DNA of 64,000 bases from Phallusia mammillata (taxonomy: Eukaryota): positions 6,820,001 to 6,884,000 of the forward strand of contig OZ281500.1 in assembly GCA_965637545.1 (NCBI GenBank). The letters are read 5' to 3'. Shown here in pieces: positions 1,410-64,000 of the stretch (positions are counted from its first letter, which is position 1; every line of letters begins with the position of its first letter). Below the pieces are notes generated by a model. The model saw nothing but the letters and a program-made list of their open reading frames with translations, was not told the DNA's origin and searched no databases. Both the position numbers and the translations under genes were made by a program.

Positions 1410-4029
1410 TCAAACAAAACCTATCAAACGAAAGACATAAACCCATTTTGCTTTGGTCAAGGCTGGATTTAGAACTGGCAATGTAATTTTAACACCACCA
1501 GGACTTATGGATTGCCATGTAAGCAGGGATGCACCTCCGACTAAATCAACAGAGGCAGAAGAAGTTGAAATTGGGGAACCCAACTCAAGAATGTTGGAAT
1601 CAGGCCATGAAAAACTGAAAGCATATACATGTTTTCCGTTCATGGTGTACCTGCAAACCAAAATGTATTTTAGGTTTGCACAAAGCTGGTTTTTATGCAG
1701 TTAGGTAAGTTAAATAAGTACCATAAAAGCCCCTCAAAAAAACAGCAGACATGTGGGGAATTACTTCAACCAAACCTGGTTGTATCCAATGGGTTAAGCC
1801 AGTGTTTCTTAACCCTTTTTTCTGTATTATTTTTCTGTTTTTCTGTATAAGACTTCATTTTTTAGCAAAATTGTATCGCTTTTTAAGTTCAAATAAAAAT
1901 ACATCAGTTTTAGTTATAGCTATAAGATATATAAGACATTTTTTTCCTAAAAAAACAAATGTCTCCAGGAAAAGAAAAACTTACCAAACATCCTTATTTG
2001 TTTGATCATTCTGATGTTTCCAGGGCTTACTGCTGTAAACTGCTTCCCCATTTACATTAAGCCATTCACCCATTTGTCGAAGTCGCTCTTCAAATATTGG
2101 TGTGATTGTTCCTTCTTTTGTTGGACCAACATTCATTAGCATGTTGCCATTGCAGCTGATGGTTGTCACAAGTTGCTGATCAGAGAAAAAACGAAAGTTA
2201 ACAGCCACTTTTAGTGTAAGTGTAACCACAGAATAAGAGTGCAAACAAATTTGGTTGATACCAAAGCTTTTCTAAAAATTAACCAGAATGTTTTCTACAG
2301 GCCAAAATTTGGAAATAAGTTTGTAATAAAACATAATCCATAATTAAGCAGATTACAATAAACTGGAAACAGTAATGGCTGCAACATCAATTTAAAACCA
2401 TATGTTTGAGTATATTTAGTTGGGACATGGTCAGGCTAAATTTGTCTACAATATAAGTTTTATCAGACAAACCTTCCTTACTGAAAATACAGGGGCAGGA
2501 GTAATGTAGTTTTGAACAACAAAAAATATATAAAACCTGGCTTTTATAAAATATTAATAATTAACTCACACATATTTATATGAGCATCAAGTAAGAAAAA
2601 CAAATGCTTAACCAACAAAACCCTTAACCAGTCATCACATCTGTATCACTCATGTGACAGCTTGTTATAAATATGGTTACTATTTTACAAATAAAATAAT
2701 TCCTTTTTTTACCTGCAGCAGTTCATTGATTGACATAAAGTCATTGAAGTTTGCATTCCTTCTATATCCCCAGGAATGTTTATCAATAGTTAAAGCATTT
2801 TCCCACTTTCTTGTTTGCAGAGTATGGGGATTGTATCTGTCATCACATGTCAAAAACCCTCCATGCTTGCATAAAACATCCCGACCCCATCTATCATTGG
2901 TGACAACAATATCCTGGAGAGACAAAAATTATTTAACAAAACTCGATGTTCAACGAAGAAGAGCAGCCAAATTTTTTCTTTACCTTCACAGGAGATTCAT
3001 TGTAAAGCCAAGCAACAAATTCTGCACTGTTCCAATAGCTTGAGTTAGTTCCCTGATCACCATCTGACCAAACAATGTCAGGTTTGTATCTACTGACTAT
3101 GTCATACAGTTCAGGCATCGACTTCATTCTGTGTGCAAGTTTGTTGTGTGTGTTTTTTTGCGAAATATCGTTATTTGTAAAAAAAACTCTGCAAATATGT
3201 TTAGCAGCTGGATAACTTACCTTGGAAATTCGTTAGTTGTAAAGTTATTTTGTTTGTCATTGAGGTAAAGCGGGTTTAGAAAGTCATGTAGATTATGGTA
3301 AAGTCCAAAGCGGAGAGACGTCCTGTTTTTTATTGCATTTGCTAAGTCTCCAACAATATCACGTTTTGGCCCAACATCCATTGAGTTCCAGTTGACAGAA
3401 GTTGCAGAAGGCCAGTTTGTGTAACCCTCACCATGTTTGCTTGTGAAGACAACATATTTGGCTCCAGATGCCTAGCAACATAACATAGCAAACCATTTTA
3501 ACGCTAGTTGTCTTCATTTTGTATTGAAACTTAAAAAGTACCTCAAACATGTCAGCCCATTTGTTAGGATCAAAAAACTCAGCTGTAAACTGGGGAGCAA
3601 AGTCAGGATATGTGAAACCTGGAGGGTAATTCTTTTCCATGAAATCTATAGCATGTGGATTTGCCAATGCCTTCCAGTAGTACCAGAATAGTTCAGCCAA
3701 AAATCCATCTCCAAAACTTGGTACTGAGAAAACTCCCCAGTGAATAAAAATACCAAGTTTTGCTTCATCGTACCTTTCAAAAATTAATGGAAATTTTCAT
3801 GATATTTTTTGAATACTAATGGAAGCAGAATATTACACTTAAATGACTACACACTTTTTGTTTACAGCTGAACAAAACTAATGTGGCATGTATGCCAATA
3901 TTTTGAGCATTAATAATCTTACCATGAAGGCAGGGGTCGTGTGTCCAGTGATTCCCAGTTCGGTTTGTATTCTCCATATCCCCTTGTTGCACAAACAGCC
4001 AAAATTACCAAAACAGCAATCAACCTCAT
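1410..4029 (-). CDS. FUCA: alpha-L-fucosidase (GH29) paralogue 1, 7 exons, 455 aa, divergent active site
   Basis: Exons traced by hand with GT-AG borders and continuous frame: 4029-3923, 3773-3542, 3471-3221, 3128-2984, 2913-2713, 2175-1985, 1650-1410 (1368 nt). Signal peptide [15 protein letters not shown], then [58 protein letters not shown]. Confidence 0.95.
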
Positions 4030-17654: not shown

Positions 17655-17662
17655 TCACGTGA
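17655..17662. promoter_or_regulatory. TCACGTGA palindromic E-box (CLEAR/TFEB-MITF-like) upstream of PPT1, overlapping the transposon TSD
   Basis: Exact motif at 17655-17662; its first 4 nt are the last 4 nt of the TSD. Confidence 0.5.
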
Positions 17663-21220: not shown

Positions 21221-24200
21221 TTAATTAAAACCTATGAGACGAAACACATAAACCCATTTTGCTTTGGATGATGCTGGATTTACAATTGGCATAACAATTC
21301 CCACACCAGTTGGACTTAATGGTTCCCAAGTCAATGAACTGCCACCCCCAATTAACTCGATAGAGGCAGATTTGGAAGTGACAATTGGGGATCCGATCTC
21401 AAGAATGCCAGAGTCAGGCCATGAAAAGCTGAAGGCATATACTTTATTTCCATTCATAGTATACCTATAAAAAAGTATGTTAAACAGTTGCAAGGTACAT
21501 AGATTGTTTAAACCAGAAAAAAATTGATGTGTCCAGCAGAACCACAAGTACCAAAAGCCATCAATGTGTCCTTCAAATGTATAAATGGTCTAGCACAGTG
21601 GTTCCCGACCAGGAATTTTTAAAAAAGAGGGCAGGAATTTACTTTAATTTTGTGATTTGTAAATAGACACATAAGCTCTGGGAATACAGCCTGTGAAGTT
21701 CATAAAAGACCTAATTTTAAATGATCTTTTTGTAGTTTGGATCTATTATGTAGTATATGAGTAAGGAATAAAAATGTTGTGAATTGTTAAGGGAGGAATT
21801 CATCAAAACAGGTTTGGTACCACTGATCTAGCAGCTGGATTCAATATGTCTACGCAGCCCAGACTAGACCCTAAAATGATCTTCAAGATGAATTTTAGAA
21901 ATAAGTTTAAAATGCCTATTCAGTGCTTGGTCATTTTTTCTTACCAAACATTAGAATTCATGGAGTCATTCTGATGCTTCCATGGCTTACTGCTGTACAC
22001 TGCTTCCCCATTTAATTTGAGCCATTCACCCATCTGTCGAAGTCGCTCTTCAAAAATTGGAATAATTGTTCCTTCTTTGGTAGGACCAACATTCATTAGC
22101 ATGTTACCATTGCAACTGATAGTAACCACAAATTTCTGGAAAAAAGATTATCTTCCTAATACAAGTTTTTACTTTTAAACAAAGGAATTTAAATTGAACT
22201 GTGATGTACAAATCTCATTCAATCTAGACGTTGTTTAAAGTTAGACCCATTTTAGGAGACAAGGTTAAAGCAACAGCTAATGCATCACAATGGCTTGTTC
22301 TACAAACTCCACAAACTTTTTTCCAACAGAAAAATTTGACTTATTTAGTGAGTTATTGAAACAGCATACAAAATAGTGCTATGTTGTATATACTGTGTAA
22401 ATTATACTTTTTGGACTTACCATAATAGGCCAGCAAGTTACGTAGTGGTGTCAAACAAAACAATCAACACCCAACAATTCCAAACCTCTATTTACTATCC
22501 AACCTTGACATGTCTGTACAGTAGCTTTTTGCTTTACGTAACCACAGCAAGAATAGCATGTGATAAACATTTAGATTCTTGGTGGCTAACAGAACTAGTG
22601 GAAATCTGTATTAGATTTACCTGCAGTAACTCGTTGATTGACATGTATGCTTTGAAGTCAACATTTCTTCTGTATCCCCATGATCCTTTGTCAATAGTCA
22701 TGGCATTCTCCCATTTTCTCTTCTGCAAAGTTCCAGGATTGTACCTGTCTTGGCATGTCAGAAAGCCACCATGCTTGCATAAAGCCTCTTTGCCCCATCT
22801 GTCATTGGTTACAACAACATCCTGCAAGAAAAATTAGAAAGCTTTTTAAAGGCACAAAAGAGTTGCTGCTACATCAATATATAGTCATTATGTGGGAAGG
22901 GTGTTTTACCTTCACTGGGCTTTTGTTGTACAGCCAGGCCAGGAACTCCTTACTTTTCCAGTAGTTTTCACTTGCTTCCCAATCACCATCAGACCAAACA
23001 ATATCAGGCTTGAAATGATTGACAAGGTAATACAACTCAGGCATTGTCTTTGACCTGTGTCAAACAAAAATGATGAAATGGGCTTAATTACAAAGTTGGC
23101 CATATCCAGAAAAAAATTGATTTACAGCTGTTCAAATTTTGAAAAATACATACATGTTAAATATGTACGTTTTGGATTCAAAACTAATCTTAAGATTTCC
23201 TGGAACGAATTACAAATATTTTTGTGTAATTTAAGTGTTCTTACGTCACAAATGTATCAGTTGTAAAATTTTTCTTTTTGTCCTCAAGATATTTGGGGTT
23301 AAACCACTCAAACAGTGAGTGGTACAAACCAAGCCGAAGAGCTCCTTTCTTATTGATTGCATTTGCAAACTCTCCCACTATGTTCCGTTTTGGTCCAACA
23401 GCCATTGAGTTCCAGTTAAAAGAGCTATCAGATGGCCAGTTTGTGTAACCCTCGTGATGTTTGCTGGTTAGGACAACATATTTGGCCCCAGATGCCTATA
23501 AAAAAAACAATAATATTATATAATACAAATTCAGGCAAATGTTAAAGACATATTATTTTGGTGTGCAGCCTAAACTTACAGGTCCTCTTTTTGTGTTCTA
23601 GAAAATCTTTTGTGTTCGGACATTAAATAGATTAAAAGATTTTACTTGCTCTTTTATTGGTTAATGGATCTTAACCTAAACCAATAACAAAAGAGAAAAC
23701 CTATACTGCCTTTTACCTCAAAAAGATCAGCCCACTTGTCTGCATCAAAGAACTCAGCAGTAAACTGGGGTGCAAAGTCAGCATAGGTGAAACCTGGTGC
23801 ATAGTTTTTGTGCATGAAATATTTGGCATCAGGGTTTCCATTCTTCCAATAATACCAGAACCATTCAGCCAGAAACCCATCACCAAAACTTGGCACTGAA
23901 AACACACCCCAATGAATAAAGATGCCAAGTTTTGCTTCATCATACCTAAAAAAATCAAATGTGCAAGTAAAAAACTTGTAAAAGCTTTTGTATTGCTGAG
24001 CTTAACAGCTCACACCAATGGATGGTGACATTTCCCTGAGGAAGTGTTGTATGAGTTCTTGCACTTGTTTAAAAAAAACTCATCATGCCTTCTTGACCTG
24101 AGTGTATTTACAAAAAAATCATTGTGGCACAGCTATAGTAGAATACTGGTTACCAAACACAAACAGTATAGTGGCCCATATGAGCATTTTAATTGGGCCA

Positions 24201-24545
24201 TAGAGCGTATGGACATGTACCCGCCCCCATGGAACAAATAAACAATGTTGCAGCTACATCGTTCAATGCAGATCAGTGTTGAGTGCTATTCTTTGCAGAA
24301 AAATGCGAACTTAGCTCCTATTGTAGCCTACATTTAGTTTTTCTATACCTCGCGAGTTGCAATCGTTAATGTAATTGGTTTATTTTTAAACTGTAATGTA
24401 CTTGGCACAATATATTAGATTTTTGAACTTTTGTTATTGCTTACCATGATGGTAATGGTCGCTTGTCCAGTGAATCCCATGTCGGCTTATACTCCGCTGA
24501 ACAGCCAGAAATGACTAAAACGGCGAGTACACAAGCGAACTTCAT
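21221..24545 (-). CDS. FUCA: alpha-L-fucosidase (GH29) paralogue 2, 7 exons, 453 aa
   Basis: Exons 24545-24445, 23945-23717, 23495-23245, 23054-22910, 22821-22621, 22135-21945, 21464-21221; canonical [31 protein letters not shown]. Confidence 0.95.
21596..21825. mobile_element. hAT-type MITE in last intron of FUCA copy 2
   Basis: Ends CAGTGGTTCC / GGTACCACTG; flanking 8-mers GTCTAGCA / ATCTAGCA (7/8 match). Confidence 0.7.
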
Positions 24546-25371: not shown

Positions 25372-28300
25372 TTAGGCTGATTCAAATCCTGTCAATCTGA
25401 AGACATAAACCCATTTTGCCTTGATAGTTGCAGGGTTTACAACTGGCAACAAAATTCCAACACCTCTAGGTTGTAATGGTTCCCATTTGAGTGCTGAATC
25501 ACCTCCCAACAAATCAATGGTTGCACCTGGTTTTGGATTTGCTGCTCCCAGAATTAACACACCTGAATCTGGCCATGAAAAGCTGAAGGCATATATCTTG
25601 TCTTCATTCTTGGTGTACCTGAAAATGAACATCAAATGTTTACAACAGGGGTCGGCAGCTCCCGGCTCGCATGCCAAGGTTGGCACACAAGGTGGTTTTT
25701 CATGGCATGCCAACCGATTTGCGTGTTTATATTGAAGTAACAATTTAACCTGTCACACTGCTTGTTTTCAGTTTTTATCATGTCATTGTCTTAAAATACA
25801 ACCTTACATGTACAAAACACTCTGCTTTCTCTTTATTATCGATATCAGCTGGCACGAACCACCATTAGTTAGAAAAACGTTGGCATGTGAGGTCATTAAC
25901 ACATGGAAATAACAAGTAAAATGACACCGGTCGCCTGAAAGGTTGCCGACCCCTGGTTTACAACATATGGTTTATCACATCAAAAGGGAAGATATTAAAT
26001 TATAATGCAAATGCCACTTTGCTGTCATTCAATGCTTGCAACATGCACAGGGTATAATGGTAAATGATTACAATGTAGTCATAAATATTTAGCTAAAATT
26101 TTATGGTTTGACAACAGTCGCAAACTTTGCTGCAAACCTTCTTGCAACAAGTTGTTAACCGTCTGATAACCGTTACAATAAAACAAAGCTCTGAAGTAAC
26201 AATTAAATTTATTGTCGGATGAATGTTTTCTGTTACATTTGTTGGAGATTAAGTTCTGTAATTTAACTTACCAAACACCTTTAGTCATGGTGTCATTCTG
26301 GTGTGTCCATGGCTTACTACTGTACACTCCTTCACCATTTACTCCGAGCCATTCACCCATCTGTCTTAATCGTTCCTCAAACACAGGGGTAATTGTTCCT
26401 TCTTTAGTCGGCCCCACATTTACAAGAATATTGCCATTGCAACTGATTGTGGTAACTAGCTCCTATACAATATAAGATCCAAAAGAAACAGTTCAAACCT
26501 TTGAATATTTTTTAAGTGAAGCACAAAAATTTGTTTTAAAAATTTGTTTTAACCTAGTGCATTTACCTGCAACAACTCTTCAATTGTCATGTACTGATCA
26601 AATTGGATATTTCTTCTGTAACCCCAGGAGCCCTTGTCAATAGTCATAGCATTTTCCCACTTTCTTGTTTGAAGGGTGCCTGGGTTGTATCTATCAGAGC
26701 ATGTAAGGTAGCCACCATGCTTACATAGTGTGTCACTGCCCCATCGATCATTTGTGACAACAGTATTCTGTGATTTTTATACAGTACAAAGAAAAGCTGT
26801 TTAATGACGATGGACAAGTGTACCCACAAAGTTTTTATTATCATAAAACACAAATAATGTGGAAATGACCTGATATATTGGATCAAATTTTAGGTTTCAG
26901 CCCTTTTAAAAGCAAACAGTAAAAGGCAAGTGATGGATTTATATTTAGAATATGTACCTTTACTGGACTTTCATTGTAAAGCCAAGCCAAAAAGTCTGGG
27001 CTTGACCAATATGAGGAGTTTGCTTCCCATTGGCCATCTGACCAGATTACATCTGGTTTGTAACGGTTCACAATATCATAGAGTTCAGGCATTGTTTTTT
27101 CCCTAACAGATAAAAAATATTAGCACATTGATTAGAAATAGTAATGCTAGTAACATGGTATTGGCATAACTTAAGAATGCTTCTGTTTATTTATGTGTTT
27201 TAAACCAATATGCCTGTCAGTTTTAATTTACTTACTTGACAAATTTATCTGTTTTAAAACCACTTTCTTTATCTTGAAGATAGGATGGGTTAAACCATTC
27301 AAAAAGTGAATGGTAAAGTCCGAAGTGTATTGATGTTTTGTTTCGGATTTCATTTGCCAATTCACCAACTATATCCCGTTTAGGACCAATATCCATAGAG
27401 TTCCAGTTCCAGGAAGTAGCAGAAGGCCAATTTGTGTAACCTTCATGGTGCTTACTTGTCAGCACAATGTACTTGGCTCCAGATGCCTAAACAAAGCGTT
27501 TATCATTCTGCCAATTTTATTAGTGTAAATTATGAGAATAAAACTTTTAATGTTCGGCCTGAAACTGTTGTACAACAATGATGTATATTCCTCTAATATC
27601 TATCCAATTGTACTCAACCACAAAACATCAAACTCACTTGTGTTCTTATAGAGTGTTCTCATAATTCTCTAACATCAGTGAAATTAGTCACTTTAAAAAC
27701 ATTATGTTTGCATTTAGCAGGCAACAAGTTAAGAAACAGTACACAAACAAACAGACTTTTCTTTAGGGAAAGATTTGTATTTGTCCCAAAATTTACAATT
27801 CTTAATCTACCTGAAAGATTTCTGCCCATTTGTCAGCATCATAAAACTCTGCAGTGAATTGTTTGGCAAAGTCACCATAGGTAAAATCTGGTGGGTAGTT
27901 CTGTTGCATAAAGTACACTTCAGCTGGACTGGACACCCCTTGCCAATTCCACCAAAACCATTCAGAGGCAGCACCTTGCCCATAACTTGGAACTGCAAAG
28001 ACTCCCCAGTGAATAAAGATGCCAAATTTAGCTTCATCATACCTGTCAATACAAATAACACCAAATGTCAATTTAGTTGAGGTGTTTGTGGCATTTCAGA
28101 GTTTGCAAGGTTTTTGATTAGGTAACATGAAGTATTTTGCTTGGTTTGCACCATTCCCCCAAGCAAAGATACACAAAAACAAACCTGCACCAAACATAGC
28201 CTAGAAATAACTCATTTGTACACAAACATACTCCATTTGTATACACAAACCAATGCTTATTGCAATCAAAAACTTTGGTGTCGTAATTTGAAACTCACAG

Positions 28301-28553
28301 AAAATCACATAAAACAGCCTAAATTTGTGTGGGAAGTTGCTTAACTTCATAAAAGTTCATAAAAGTACGCATTAACATTCTACGAAACAAAGATGCTTCA
28401 GTTTTTTCGCCAAAGACCGATTCGGCAATGAACTTATTCAACTTACCACGTTGGCAACGGTCTGGAGTCCAAAGAATCCCAGTTTGGTTCATAATTGGCG
28501 TTGCAGAATGCAATGCACATTGATAACAATGACAAAGAAATCACACTCTTCAT
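25372..28553 (-). CDS. FUCA: alpha-L-fucosidase (GH29) paralogue 3, 7 exons, 457 aa
   Basis: Exons 28553-28447, 28042-27811, 27486-27236, 27102-26958, 26767-26567, 26462-26272, 25618-25372; canonical [27 protein letters not shown]. Confidence 0.95.
25646..25955. mobile_element. hAT-type MITE in last intron of FUCA copy 3
   Basis: TIR CAGGGGTCGGCA / TGCCGACCCCTG; perfect 8-bp TSD GTTTACAA. Confidence 0.9.
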
Positions 28554-28635: not shown

Positions 28636-28643
28636 TCACGTGA
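28636..28643. promoter_or_regulatory. TCACGTGA E-box (CLEAR-like) ~85 bp upstream of FUCA copy 3 ATG
   Basis: Exact palindrome in the CpG-rich proximal upstream region of a lysosomal hydrolase gene. Confidence 0.5.
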
Positions 28644-56898: not shown

Positions 56899-59083
56899 GT
56901 ATAGCTGACCTTAGGTGTTTGTGTGAAGTAGTGTCACGTCTTTGTGGTAAAGTGTTTGATATATCAATTGTAGTGTCGTGGCCTTAAGTATTTTATTGTG
57001 CGCTATTCACAAACCCTTTGTCGTGAAAAACAAATTAAAATGTGCTTTGGGCTGTAGTCATTTCATGGCACATAGACAACTCCATTTGCGAGATGTAGGC
57101 TATATAGGTTGTATACAATAGTATGCAAAAAATAGACATTAACAAAATTGCCAGCGATGTAGAATAAAACGTATTCATCGAATATATCTCTGGCAATTTG
57201 GTTATTATTAAAGCTACTATTTAAGTCCGTGTCTTGTGTACCTAAAACATAAACGAAATAAACCAAAAATGTTTTCAATATAAAAGGTTTTAGTTGATAA
57301 AAAACAAAAAACAAGAATTAAGGCTGCGCAATGAACCGTAAATTGTGTTTTTTCATGCTAAAAACTTTACACAACAAAGTAGTTCGTCAGGTCACCTATG
57401 CGTCATCCAAGCAACAAAAAAAACATCCTAAGCGGAGATAATCTAATAACCATGATTTGCGGCTAGGTACGTTGGCGTCGAATTATTGATTAGACGTGCC
57501 TAGCCGATCTACCCAGCCCAAGGCTATGGCTTTGAAGTCCCAAAGAACGTGCCAGGTGTGTCTTACCGTGCTCGTTACGATGATATGATTTGCCTTGCAA
57601 CCAGACTAGAGGTTGCATTAGCAAGTCAAAGTGTTTACGAGTCATACTGACTGTTATTTATAAGTTAACGCTACGGCTGAATGCGAATATGACTAAATTT
57701 TTACCACAGCAGTGTGTTGGGCCATACAGGCCTACAGCCTAGTCGATTTACTAACAAAGGTCAAAAGGTCACACATTTATCCAAAATCATTTCATGTCGT
57801 ACGTAAAATCGTTTCAAACCAGACGTTATCTAAAAGGTCCAGCCTGTTTTTATTCCAACACAATGAACGTTGTTGGAAATTCAGAACTGCTGGTACCAGA
57901 GCCTTTGAATGGGTTTCGACTTTTAACTGGGTTTCGACTGAAATGGGTTTCGACTTTAATGTACCCTGCGCGTTAACCGGCATTTGTTGTTGATGTGTTC
58001 AAATAGCATATTTCAAAACCGCCGTGCACAGCAGTTTAAATATTAACTATGTACTGGGCAACAGTTCCAAATTCATTATTTGTTTCTGTGTGGGGCGAAA
58101 AGGTCATGTAACGCATTGTTTCGATTTATGAGACATACCTCATAACAAAACCACTAAGAACCACACAACAGGCTCCATAAACCTCTGGCTGTCAAGGCTG
58201 ATGCCTATTCGATTCAAATTAATTTGTTTGGCGCGGCCTACATACATTTTTGTGCTATTTATTGGTCAAAAAAATCTAAAGTTCACAGCAAATCAAAAAC
58301 ATTTAGAAAGAAATTAGCTTCAACGAACAGAACGACTAAATGGCAAGGCTGGTTTGCAATATAGTTCCGGTTAAACTAAAGGTTATGGTGCGTCGTGACG
58401 GTTATGAACCTAGTTTGACCTTTCTTAGTGTGTTCAGTTGCCTGTAATAACCACACGCTGCACTGTATAGCAGATACCCTCACAGTGGTTTGGGTGGTTA
58501 TACGGCCACAAAAAGAGCGAGTACAGTACTCGACTTCACATCAAACGTTTAATGGCAAATAATTGCAAGAGATTTGGCGCAAGGACATTTGTGTCAGCGA
58601 CAGTCAATTTTCTTACAGTGTTTACCGTGGTGTGGATTGAGGATTGATTACCAGTCCGTTCTTCACAGCTTTCGGCCCTTCCTTAACATAAAGTGTGTTA
58701 TAACGGGATATACAATAATTTCCTGAACAACATCACGTGAAACCCGACGTTGCAAGTCATAAAATGAGACACGTGTACAATCCTAAAACTTACTAGTTAG
58801 AAAACTGTGAAATGTGTCGTAATGCATTATAGCGATGCAGTTTGCCTGGAGGTCGTATTAGGCGTTTGGCGGTGTCCATAATTAATGATTGGTCGTATGT
58901 TAGAGCTGTCTATTTACCAGCCTCCGCACACCGCAAGGTTATGAATGTACCGGCGCTGCGTTCTTGCGTCTTCGTTGTTTACATGTTGCGCCCTGTGGCT
59001 TGATAATCTGTAGATATGTACTTTAGCTGTTAAACCAGTTATTTGACTTGAGTCGATTTTTTCCTTTTCGCGTGTAGCCAATA

Positions 59084-62300: not shown

Positions 62301-64000
62301 TACGCTTGCTTCCGTTTCGTGCTTCGAACAACGAGATTTTGGACTGAAGCAACTTTTGACCATAGCTTTTTTGCTATACAACTCAAGTCCCAGCCGTAAG
62401 GTTTCATATTTCACTACAAGCTTTGAAGTTGTACGTTTCCCCCCTGTGGGAAGCTATGAGCTTTAACATTGCAATTAAATCCAACTAAAATCACCATTAC
62501 ACAGAAGTGATTGTCGACCGCATCGTAATTTTTTCCGCTTCTGTGGGTTTGTTTTCTCCAGCGCGAATCGCGTGGTATATAGTCTTGAGTTTAATGACGT
62601 TTTTCGTTTTGTTTACGACAAATTGTGGTCGCCGCGCTTTAACATCTCTAGTTTATGGTTGAAAAACCGTCACGTGTGTATAAAGTCGCGCGTCATCGTA
62701 ATCTGCCGTCACGAGTTAAAATCACGTGAGCAGCTAAAAAAACACGATTTTACACAATAAATTCCAATGCAGTTTTTAAAGATACAAGTCAACATTTGGG
62801 CGTAAAACATCACAGCGTTTCGACAGTTTATTTTGTCAGCGTCAGGTGAAATAAAACCGTGCAGTGCGTTCCCCAAATTTGTGGTGTTTCTTTAATCTAG
62901 TATTCCTAATCCGCTTTGTATACACTGATCCAAGGAGTAAAATTCCAGCTGATGTAACTTAAACGTTGAAGTAGTGAGGCAAGCTGATTTGAATATAGCC
63001 CAGCCGTCATATGTTTACCAGACCAGTCAGCCAATAATCTGCCGCAGAAGGTTATTTTTGACTGTCTGTGAACGTGTACGGTTTGTGGATATCCGCGACG
63101 ACGATTTGTGGGAATTTTTCGGAATTGCGATTAAATATTGCGGGGCCATGATGTGCTAGACTTTACTTTATAAATTAAAGTGGTTCCCAACCTTTTTCGA
63201 CGAATTCCTCCCTTTACAATTCAATGCATTTTCATTCCTCCCTGATATACTACATGGTAGGCCTAAACCATTAAAATATATGTTTTTCTGTTCCTATGTT
63301 CAACGGTTGGTGAAACCCTCTGCCATAAATATCAGCCAGTAAAAAGTTTTGATGCATGTGACGTGTTCGCTAAGTTTGTGAAGAGTCAACAAGGGAAATC
63401 CCCGTTTTAACTTCGCCGAAATAATCAGGCGGACTTAACCAAGCAGAATAATTCGATGGAAAATCCAGTTTCCCACAGATCGAAAATTTGTTGCAAGTGG
63501 GGAAATTTGGTGACTCGCGCGGCATGTATGCGTGGCACGTGATTGACGTCACTAATTCGCGAACTTTTGTAGTTACCGAATTCGAAAGCATTGTTTTGGT
63601 TGTCACAATGGTCGTTTGGGCTTTCGGCTAATTGTCTTCTTGCCTCGTGAATAATTAACGCACTGTTGTAAACATCGTGACCGGCAAATTTCTAAATACA
63701 TTTATCACTTAAAAGGTTTACAAACGACCACAAGCAATCAGTTTCTCCTAATGTCGACTTCATAATTTAAGGTCTTACCGCCTCTTTAGTTCGTATTAGA
63801 CAGGAATTTTAAACTCTTTCAAGTAAACATTTAACTGAGGTTTGCCCACGTACATCGTTGTCGCAACGTCGAAGACAATTACGGTTGTATTTGCACCCAT
63901 CACACCTCACAGTTGACAGGGAAACAACTGGCTGTCAAAATTGCCAGGAACTTTACATCATTAAACATAAAAACACGCCTAGGGTGGTCGAACCCATTTT

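What the first reader, a model, noticed from the sequence alone, without database searches (positions are those of the whole stretch)
1410..4029. Fucosidase paralogue 1 has a re-engineered sugar-binding pocket: candidate new GH29 specificity
The ORF is intact with signal peptide, FIHWG His, nucleophile WSDG, NDRW Arg and KWE Glu retained. However AEWFW->AELFW (TGG->CTA), KHHEG->KHGEG (CAC->GGT), HSLFEWF->HNLHDFL and DG(D/Q)WE->DGDQG, while copies 2 and 3 are canonical. In the Thermotoga GH29 structure the equivalent Trp67 and His129 hydrogen-bond the fucose O2/O3 side. Paired multi-nucleotide changes to smaller residues suggest room for a C2 substituent such as 2-O-sulfate, O-methyl or N-acetyl. 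Sulfated L-fucans and L-galactans occur in marine invertebrates, including ascidian tunic. Substrate is inference.
Basis: partly seen in the sequence, partly recalled or inferred. Interest (0 to 1): 0.75.

Follow-up and report, generated by a model that had tools for sequence, protein, structure and literature searches.

The report
Sea-squirt fucosidase copy with altered sugar pocket
One of three neighbouring sea-squirt (Phallusia mammillata) genes for the sugar-trimming enzyme alpha-L-fucosidase is intact and kept by selection, yet has lost both residues that normally grip the sugar's 2-hydroxyl, so it probably acts on a modified fucose or binds sugar differently; no assay has tested this.

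Summary
Window 1410-4029 (minus strand) holds an intact 7-exon, GT-AG-spliced GH29A alpha-L-fucosidase gene of 455 aa. Its product is identical to Phallusia mammillata UniProt A0A6F9DDQ2.

It has Leu for human Trp71 and Gly for His134. In solved GH29 structures these are the only two side chains that hydrogen-bond fucose O2. Neither replacement occurs in 246 other animal GH29A proteins. Nucleophile, acid/base, O3 and O4 ligands and the C6-methyl pocket are all kept.

The gene is not decaying. The copy-1 branch has omega 0.16 and neutrality is rejected (p 7e-6). Copy 1 evolves no faster than its canonical sister copy 2 (38 vs 30 unique replacements). The AlphaFold model has pLDDT 94 and TM 0.93-0.98 to human FucA1.

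Copy-1-specific replacements concentrate in the catalytic-face loops (12 of 38), and many need two or more steps. A formal test for raised omega there is not significant.

The sulfated-fucan link to ascidians is weak. Similar O2/O3-side variants recur about 17 times among animal GH29A.

Verdict: new variant of a known kind; moderate interest.

The parts
1410..4029 (-). Copy 1 GH29A alpha-L-fucosidase-like gene. It has 7 coding exons (4029-3923, 3773-3542, 3471-3221, 3128-2984, 2913-2713, 2175-1985, 1650-1410) and encodes 455 aa with an N-terminal signal-like hydrophobic stretch.
   Evidence: Exon and intron boundaries and GT-AG sites come. The product is identical to P0226. Pfam PF01120 scores 419 bits and PF16757 78.8 bits. 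The AF2 model has pLDDT 94.2, and Foldseek gives 7PLS at TM 0.93/0.98.
3689..3691 (-). Codon CTA = Leu64, in place of Trp71 of human FucA1 (Trp67 of Thermotoga). That Trp is the O2 and O3 hydrogen-bond donor.
   Evidence: residue role from PMC11796335.
3430..3432 (-). Codon GGT = Gly127, in place of His134 of FucA1 (His129 of Thermotoga). That His is the O2 hydrogen-bond partner. The neighbouring His126 (=His133, O4 ligand) is kept.
   Evidence: residue role from PMC11796335.
3277..3294 (-). Loop after barrel strand 4: N173, H175, D176, F177 and L178 replace S, F, E, W and F. The family is 98% Ser, 98% Glu and 95% Trp at three of these positions. It lies directly after the kept pocket-floor Tyr171.
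3047..3064 (-). Nucleophile Asp219 (WSDG, kept), followed by Q222, G223 and T224 in place of W, E and A.
   Evidence: This Trp is variable in the other Phallusia paralogues.
2824..2841 (-). Acid/base loop: Asp270 (= FucA1 Asp276) is kept. His275 replaces a Gly that is 94% conserved.
   Evidence: acid/base assignment from PMC9548408.
2770..2802 (-). Glu283 (= Glu289) and Trp293 (= Trp299, C6 pocket) are kept. His291 replaces the Gly that copies 2 and 3 have.
21221..24545 (-). Copy 2: the canonical sister paralogue (453 aa, = P0258), with the same 7-exon structure.
25372..28553 (-). Copy 3: a canonical paralogue (457 aa, = P0293 apart from 1 residue), with the same 7-exon structure.

Best explanation
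Copy 1 encodes a folded, secreted or lysosomal-type GH29A retaining glycosidase. It arose by tandem duplication in the Phallusia lineage and has been kept by purifying selection. It keeps the whole catalytic machinery: nucleophile Asp219, acid/base Asp270, and Arg253, Glu283 and Tyr171. It keeps the ligands of O3 and O4 (Glu63, His47, His126). It keeps the hydrophobic pocket for the C6 methyl (Phe45, Trp217, Trp293). Both side chains that hydrogen-bond O2 (Trp->Leu64, His->Gly127) have been replaced by smaller ones. The adjoining loops after strands 4, 5, 6 and 7 have been rebuilt, with three Trp lost in all (positions 64, 177 and 222) and Asn173, His175, Gln222, His275 and His291 gained. The most likely consequence (inferred, not shown) is a minus-1 subsite that still takes a 6-deoxy-L-galacto-type sugar but is widened and re-wired on the C2 side. 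The enzyme would then be poor on plain fucosides and prefer a fucose carrying something at C2 (O-methyl, O-sulfate, N-acetyl or a branch sugar) or a C2 variant. Shown here: gene integrity, identity to a database protein, the residue replacements and their structural roles by homology, and selective constraint. Inferred: pocket enlargement, retained catalysis and the substrate class.
For: The gene is intact, with six GT-AG introns. The product is identical to P0226, which is listed from UniRef and nr only, without a genome contig. This fits the de novo embryonic transcriptome of P. mammillata that its authors said they were depositing at ENA (PMC7237864). The link between that deposit and this record is my inference.

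Both O2 ligands are replaced and the other 11 canonical minus-1 residues are kept.

Selection: dN/dS between copies 1 and 2 is 0.145 at dS 1.2. Unique replacements are 38 vs 30 (not significant), and terminal branch lengths are 0.29 vs 0.24. The ML branch model gives omega 0.16 for copy 1, and omega = 1 is rejected (2dl 20.3, p 7e-6). Within the 88 catalytic-face codons omega is 0.12 and omega = 1 is rejected (p 0.004), so the remodelled face is itself conserved.

Replacements are enriched in catalytic-face loops: 12 of 38 for copy 1, against 3 of 30 for copy 2 and 7 of 58 for copy 3. Of those 12, 7 need at least 2 nonsynonymous steps, against 4 of 26 elsewhere (p 0.011).

TGG->CTA needs one replacement plus two later synonymous changes, so Leu64 is old. 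The fold is predicted with confidence and superposes on FucA1 at 1.2 A. GH29 already contains enzymes whose minus-1 specificity has shifted: L-galactosidase 7LJJ and the ClAgl29 structures 7XSF/7XSH, one solved with bound L-glucose.
Against: The raised omega in the catalytic face of copy 1 is not significant (p 0.15). The catalytic-face segments were chosen after I had seen the changes. No model coordinates were available, so the cavity and the position of the new polar residues rest on barrel topology and homology, not on measurement. No orthologue from another Ascidiidae species was found, so conservation of Leu and Gly across species is untested. No C2-modified fucose is documented for ascidians in the papers read. 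Losing two transition-state contacts could simply give a weak enzyme.
Confidence: 0.45

Rival explanations
1. Copy 1 is a weakened or non-hydrolytic sugar-binding paralogue (lectin-like). Ascidian sperm alpha-L-fucosidase is reported to mediate binding to fucosyl glycoproteins of the egg coat at seawater pH, where it hardly hydrolyses. Copy 1 could be a binding-specialised or recognition-specialised copy whose pocket changes alter which fucosylated glycan it holds, for example fucose extended at O3 as on EGF O-fucose glycans.
For: (PMC9265791): sperm fucosidase acts as a coat-binding protein in Ciona and Halocynthia, and HrVC70 carries Gal-GlcNAc-beta1-3Fuc-O-Ser/Thr. The family has expanded to about 7 genes in this genome. 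Trp71 also contacts O3 and the +1 site in AlfC. Purifying selection fits any retained function.
Against: Both catalytic carboxylates and their supporting residues are kept after dS above 1, which a pure binder does not need. Another genomic copy (C5, L002) appears to carry Asn at the acid/base position, so it is a more obvious candidate for a non-hydrolytic binder. Losing the O2 contacts should weaken binding of plain fucose. The likely embryonic-transcriptome origin of P0226 does not point to sperm, but this is weak evidence.
Confidence: 0.25
2. Copy 1 is an ordinary alpha-L-fucosidase after all. The new polar residues (Asn173, His175, Gln222, His275) take over the O2 contacts, so specificity is unchanged. 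The changes would then be compensated drift.
For: Eleven of 13 canonical residues are kept. Several new H-bonding residues lie in the neighbouring loops. Other animals tolerate Cys, Val, Ala or Tyr at His134 and Phe, Tyr or Gly at Trp71.
Against: Trp71 and His134 are 97% and 93% conserved in animals and conserved from Thermotoga to human. Simultaneous loss of both O2 partners is very rare: besides copy 1, only P0376 among the 247 near-full-length proteins and the shorter, degenerate P0100. The changes are radical in size.
Confidence: 0.12
3. Copy 1 is a decaying duplicate (incipient pseudogene) whose pocket mutations are the first loss-of-function hits.
For: It is a redundant tandem family.
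Against: The 455-codon frame is open and all splice sites are intact at dS about 0.6 per lineage. The chance of no stop under neutrality is below 1e-6 already at 0.2 substitutions per site. Omega = 1 is rejected for the copy-1 branch (p 7e-6). The rate equals that of copy 2. The product matches a database protein that is probably transcript-derived.
Confidence: 0.04

Closest known systems
Human tissue alpha-L-fucosidase FucA1 (PDB 7PLS/7PM4), GH29 subfamily A
   Same: 52% identity. The model superposes at TM 0.93/0.98 and rmsd 1.2 A. The domain pair is the same (PF01120 + PF16757). The nucleophile (D225), the animal-type Asp acid/base (D276), and E289, R259, H58, H133, E70, Y177, W223, W299 and F56 are all present.
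   Different: Trp71->Leu and His134->Gly (both O2 ligands), S179N, E182D, W183F and W228Q. There is also a 4-residue insert before Glu70, which all three window copies and Ciona share.
Phallusia mammillata copy 2 (P0258, A0A6F9DCM4), window 21221-24545
   Same: It is the sister paralogue (support 100/97) with 73% identity, the same 7-exon structure and a similar rate.
   Different: Copy 2 has the full canonical pocket. Its own unique changes avoid the catalytic face (3 of 30) and are conservative.
GH29 members with shifted minus-1 specificity: BpGH29 exo-alpha-L-galactosidase (7LJJ/7LK7/7LNP) and the ClAgl29A/B structures (7XSF-7XSH, ClAgl29B solved with bound L-glucose)
   Same: They share the fold and family and appear among the structural matches of the model. 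They show that GH29 pockets can be retuned to another L-sugar.
   Different: They are bacterial, only 24-26% identical, and larger. From my own knowledge, not tested here, their changes concern the C6 or C4 side and not O2.
Lophotrochozoan and nematode GH29A paralogues with altered E70/W71/H134 (for example P0376: Ala/Phe/Val plus His at the 275 position; Mytilus P0383; Aplysia P0367; Liolophura P0392; Toxocara P0112 with His134->Val)
   Same: They are independent departures at the same O2/O3-side residues, with the catalytic residues kept. P0376 even shares the Gly->His change in the acid/base loop.
   Different: The residues differ (none has Leu+Gly). Most change only one of the two O2 ligands, or Glu70 as well. 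None is characterised. The co-variation with a basic residue at 275 rests on only about 3 independent events.
Ascidian sperm alpha-L-fucosidase (Ciona, Halocynthia) acting in sperm-egg coat binding
   Same: It is the same enzyme family in the same animal group, with a documented non-digestive, binding-type role.
   Different: Those proteins were described biochemically. No sequence link to copy 1 was made here, and nothing shows that they have an altered pocket.

Membership tests
Glycoside hydrolase family 29, subfamily A (animal alpha-L-fucosidases) | Sequence match to the Alpha_L_fucos catalytic domain and the fucosidase C-terminal domain, above the curated cut-offs | tested here: met
   PF01120 scores 419 bits (cut-off 25.2) and PF16757 scores 78.8 bits (cut-off 25.6) for P0226.
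Glycoside hydrolase family 29, subfamily A (animal alpha-L-fucosidases) | (beta/alpha)8 barrel plus C-terminal beta-sandwich fold | tested here: met
   The AF2 model has pLDDT 94.2 and pTM 0.92. The top Foldseek match is human FucA1 7PLS at TM 0.93/0.98 and rmsd 1.2 A.
Glycoside hydrolase family 29, subfamily A (animal alpha-L-fucosidases) | Catalytic nucleophile Asp (FucA1 Asp225, Tm Asp224) | tested here: met
   Asp219 in WSDG aligns to Asp225. The column is invariant in 245 of 246 sequences.
Glycoside hydrolase family 29, subfamily A (animal alpha-L-fucosidases) | Animal-type general acid/base Asp (FucA1 Asp276), with supporting Glu289 and Arg259 | tested here: met
   Asp270 (CDDRY), Glu283 and Arg253 are present. 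Roles are from PMC9548408.
Glycoside hydrolase family 29, subfamily A (animal alpha-L-fucosidases) | Complete fucose-binding set of the minus-1 subsite (His58, Glu70, Trp71, His133, His134, Tyr177, and the C6 pocket Phe56/Trp223/Trp299) | tested here: not met
   Trp71->Leu64 and His134->Gly127. All the others are present. Roles are from PMC11796335 and PMC7718225.
Glycoside hydrolase family 29, subfamily A (animal alpha-L-fucosidases) | Phylogenetic placement inside the animal GH29A clade | tested here: met
   It is nested in tunicate clade A, sister to canonical copy 2 (100/97).
EC 3.2.1.51 alpha-L-fucosidase (activity) | Hydrolysis of terminal alpha-L-fucosides, for example pNP-alpha-L-Fuc | not testable with these tools
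   This needs recombinant protein. By sequence it belongs to the family, but the activity label carried by the database entry is untested, and the loss of the O2 ligands puts it in doubt.

The most novel reading that the evidence does not exclude
Copy 1 is a new GH29 specificity: an exo-glycosidase that removes C2-modified L-fucose (2-O-methyl, 2-O-sulfo or 2-acetamido) or a C2-variant 6-deoxy-L-hexose without prior de-modification. The same solution (loss of the O2/O3 hydrogen-bond donors, sometimes with a basic residue recruited from the acid/base loop) would have arisen repeatedly in marine invertebrates and nematodes.
Probability: 0.2. Interest if true: 0.75.

Novelty: new variant of a known kind. 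Interest (0 to 1): 0.5.

Why it matters
The sugar-binding pocket of GH29 fucosidases is regarded as almost invariant, and prediction of specificity from sequence is an open problem in this family (PMC11189522). This is a naturally selected animal GH29A that has dropped both O2 contacts while keeping everything else. That makes it a clean, cheap test case for how the pocket can be retuned. It may also be a source of an enzyme for C2-modified fucosides (methylated or sulfated fucans, FucNAc), for which I know of no GH29 enzyme. It also points to a wider, unexamined set of pocket-variant paralogues in molluscs, annelid-like animals and ascarid nematodes. If the protein turns out to be a binder and not an enzyme, it bears on the old observation that ascidian sperm use a fucosidase as an egg-coat receptor.

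Tried and rejected

2. Orthologue survey for the EL/KHG motifs. An exon-3 search of the 1.84-billion representative library and of the 5.8-billion library gave at best 67-68% identity. The full-length search with P0226 found copy 2 (73%) and copy 3 (68%), then Ciona and Clavelina at 64-65%. No orthologue from another Ascidiidae species is in these collections, so cross-species conservation of Leu64 and Gly127 stays untested.

3. The look-up of encoding contigs for P0226 found nothing on record.

4. The supplement of the P. mammillata transcriptome paper has no mention of fucosidase.

5. Positive selection: the ML branch model shows omega for copy 1 in the catalytic face to be 3-5 times that of copies 2 and 3. 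This is not significant (p 0.15), and omega is well below 1. I therefore do not claim positive selection.

6. Co-variation of triad loss with a basic residue at position 275: the raw Fisher test gives p 4e-5. Only about 3 phylogenetically independent pairs support it (sign test not significant), so I keep it as a lead only.

7. The pseudogene reading is rejected.

8. The L-galactosidase reading (tunic L-galactans) was considered and set aside because the C6-methyl pocket residues are unchanged.

9. The DGDWE->DGDQG motif is downgraded: that Trp is variable in the clade-B paralogues of this genome.

10. No model coordinates are returned by the tools, so pocket volume and distances could not be measured.

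11. The joined spliced model was built only inside my scripts and was never sent to a search tool. Searches went exon by exon by reference. After they went through the identical database protein P0226.
Full report
**What is at the coordinates.**
The window is eukaryotic, and no long ORF spans 1410-4029. Reading the minus strand gives seven coding pieces that join through six GT-AG introns: 4029-3923, 3773-3542, 3471-3221, 3128-2984, 2913-2713, 2175-1985 and 1650-1410. The result is a 1368-nt CDS of 455 codons with no internal stop.

A six-frame Pfam scan of the whole 240-Mb assembly finds GH29 exons at three places in this window. It also finds them at four further places on other contigs, plus one fragment. 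Copies 2 (24545-21221) and 3 (28553-25372) have the same seven-exon structure and phases.

**How the searches were done.**
The spliced model was assembled only inside my own scripts. Searches were made exon by exon by reference or with an alignment whose rows were a database protein plus single exons. That search returned four Phallusia mammillata UniProt proteins.

P0226 (A0A6F9DDQ2) is 455/455 identical to my copy-1 model. P0258 is 453/453 identical to copy 2, and P0293 is 456/457 identical to copy 3. This identifies the genome as P. mammillata or something very close to it. It independently confirms the three gene models, and it gave a referenced id for all later steps.

P0226 is listed from UniRef and nr only, with no genome contig. 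A de novo embryonic transcriptome of this species (15 stages, 14,203 transcript models) was described as being deposited at ENA (PMC7237864). I infer, but could not verify, that P0226 comes from it. If so, copy 1 is transcribed and spliced as modelled.

**The observation.**
The codons are as stated: TGG->CTA at residue 64 and CAC->GGT at residue 127.

HMMER alignments of exons 2-4 to solved structures put Leu64 opposite Trp71 of human FucA1. They put Gly127 opposite His134 (His129 of Thermotoga) and Asp219 opposite the nucleophile Asp225. My human numbering fits the disease-variant positions G60D, S63L and S150F named in PMC9548408.

The active-site table of PMC11796335 assigns His134/His129 to the O2 hydrogen bond and Trp71/Trp67 to O2 and O3. 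PMC7718225 says the same for AlfC (W40 and H88 coordinate O2). So copy 1 has lost exactly the two side chains that hold O2.

Everything else in the canonical set is present. That covers Phe45, His47, Glu63, His126, Tyr171, Trp217, Asp219, Arg253, Glu283 and Trp293. It also covers Asp270, the Asp276 acid/base that Armstrong et al. established for animal enzymes.

**How unusual it is.**
I aligned 247 near-full-length animal GH29A proteins. Copy 1 departs from the consensus at 7 of the 133 columns that are at least 90% conserved: W64L, H127G, S173N, E176D, W177F, G275H and G321N. The last is shared with copies 2 and 3.

The total is not extreme (median 3, 90th percentile 11). Copy 2 has 5 such departures, but they are conservative and lie away from the pocket. 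What is unusual is where copy 1's departures fall. No other sequence has Leu at Trp71 (MAFFT alignment) or Gly at His134. All the other Phallusia genomic copies are canonical at these motifs.

The pocket is not inviolable, however. The E70/W71/H134 triad changes about 17 times on a tree of these proteins. The variants are mostly in molluscs and other lophotrochozoans (E70A with W71F/Y/G; H134C/V/A). Others are in Toxocara and Ascaris (H134V) and in a Plodia gene that has also lost the acid/base.

One environmental sequence, P0376, has Ala/Phe/Val at the triad. Like copy 1, it also has His at the normally Gly position five residues after the acid/base.

**History and selection.**
In a maximum-likelihood tree, tunicate GH29A splits into two clades. 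The three window copies form a Phallusia-only group (96/92) within one of them, with copies 1 and 2 as sisters (100/97). End branches are 0.29, 0.24 and 0.28.

Between copies 1 and 2, dN is 0.176 and dS is 1.215, giving omega 0.145. Replacements unique to copy 1 and to copy 2 number 38 and 30 (chi-square 0.94).

A three-branch codon model that I wrote gives omega 0.16 on the copy-1 branch against 0.11 on the others (difference p 0.22). It rejects neutrality for copy 1 (2dl 20.3, p 7e-6).

About 4.9% of point mutations in this CDS create a stop. An unconstrained copy would therefore almost certainly be broken at a fraction of this divergence. The gene is not a pseudogene.

Leu64 is old, since TGG->CTA needs one replacement and then two synonymous changes.

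**Where the copy-1 changes fall.**
I used the strands of the AlphaFold model to define the catalytic face of the barrel: strand ends plus eight residues, and the acid/base loop. This covers 88 residues, 19% of the protein. Of 38 copy-1-specific replacements, 12 lie there, against 3 of 30 for copy 2 and 7 of 58 for copy 3. Seven of those 12 need at least two nonsynonymous steps, against 4 of 26 elsewhere (p 0.011).

The affected loops follow strands 2, 3, 4, 5, 6 and 7, so they form a continuous sector around the O2 side. In that sector copy 1 loses three Trp in all (positions 64, 177 and 222). It gains Asn173, His175, Gln222, His275 and His291.

Two cautions apply. The segments were drawn after I knew the changes. 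The codon model finds the catalytic-face omega of copy 1 (0.12-0.14) higher than that of copies 2 and 3 (0.03-0.06), but not significantly (p 0.15). The same model rejects omega = 1 for that partition (p 0.004), so the rebuilt face is itself under constraint.

**Structure.**
With a 115-sequence alignment, AlphaFold2 gives mean pLDDT 94.2 and pTM 0.92, with no disordered segment. Foldseek ranks human FucA1 first (E 2e-62, TM 0.93/0.98, rmsd 1.2 A, 52% identity). Thermotoga fucosidase follows, then the L-galactosidase BpGH29 and the ClAgl29 structures, one of which holds L-glucose. Coordinates are not returned, so I could not measure the cavity.

**Interpretation.**
The pattern has three parts. 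Catalytic residues, O3 and O4 ligands and the C6-methyl pocket are kept. Only the O2 pair is lost, with neighbouring loops rebuilt. Selection is maintained throughout. This fits best a protein that still uses its pocket, probably still as a hydrolase of a 6-deoxy-L-galacto-type sugar, with a different requirement at C2.

I rate this at about 0.45. The substrate class (O-methyl, O-sulfate, N-acetyl, branch sugar or C2 epimer) is pure inference.

The main rival (0.25) is a binding-type role. Ascidian sperm fucosidase is reported to bind egg-coat fucosyl glycoproteins while nearly inactive in seawater. One candidate coat protein carries O-fucose extended at O3 (PMC9265791).

A compensated, ordinary fucosidase (0.12) and a decaying copy (0.04) are less likely.

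The tunic polymers documented are sulfated L-galactans, and the C6 pocket of copy 1 shows no adaptation to a 6-hydroxyl.

One suggestive but single parallel concerns Toxocara. Its secreted glycans carry 2-O-methyl-fucose (abstract of PMC6268804), and it has a GH29 paralogue with His134->Val.

**Verdict.**
This is a real and well-described sequence anomaly in a known enzyme family. It is under selection, with a plausible but untested change of function, and it has unstudied parallels in other invertebrates. I classify it as a new variant of a known kind, of moderate interest. It can be decided by a simple recombinant assay.

Noticed in passing
L002 (G000:C5:22135000-22142500), exon-5 match at L002:2956-3156: Another GH29A paralogue of this genome reads CSNRY where the others read C(S/Q/D)D(K/R)Y. 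That puts Asn at the animal acid/base Asp276 position while the rest looks canonical. It may be a catalytically impaired, binding-type copy.
   Followed up: no
L004 (G000:C4:19505000-19512500), 3519-3713: An isolated GH29 fragment covers only parts of exons 2-3. The two matches abut with no intron between them and there is an in-frame stop (DTS*NWNSM). It is most like copy 3 and is probably a pseudogene piece, perhaps retrocopied.
   Followed up: no
window 28636-28643, 17655-17662, 58733-58740, 62722-62729: The CLEAR-like palindrome TCACGTGA occurs 4 times (0.64 expected). One copy lies 83 bp upstream of the copy 3 ATG. Another lies just beyond the far end of the 12.7-kb transposon that now separates it from the copy 1 ATG. 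Copy 3, the most canonical copy, may be the housekeeping lysosomal gene.
   Followed up: partly
proteins P0329, P0330, P0353, P0355, P0358, P0369, P0372, P0376, P0383, P0387, P0364, P0367, P0392, P0395, P0397: Many mollusc and other lophotrochozoan GH29A paralogues have Glu70->Ala with Trp71->Phe/Tyr/Gly, or His134->Cys/Val/Ala. Several also have a basic residue (His/Lys/Arg) at the normally Gly position in the acid/base loop (raw 6 of 24 vs 3 of 213; only about 3 independent events).
   Followed up: partly
proteins P0112, P0164, P0166 (Toxocara canis, Ascaris lumbricoides): An ascarid GH29 paralogue has His134->Val. Toxocara secreted glycans carry 2-O-methyl-fucose (PMC6268804). This may be the same kind of O2-side adaptation.
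   Followed up: no
L001+L005 (C5:534500-548500), L002, L003 versus window copies: The two tunicate GH29A clades differ in gene structure. In the clade-B genes the exon-1/2 and exon-6/7 matches abut, as if those introns were absent. The matches to exon 2, and in some copies exon 5, are split. The window copies all share seven exons.
   Followed up: partly
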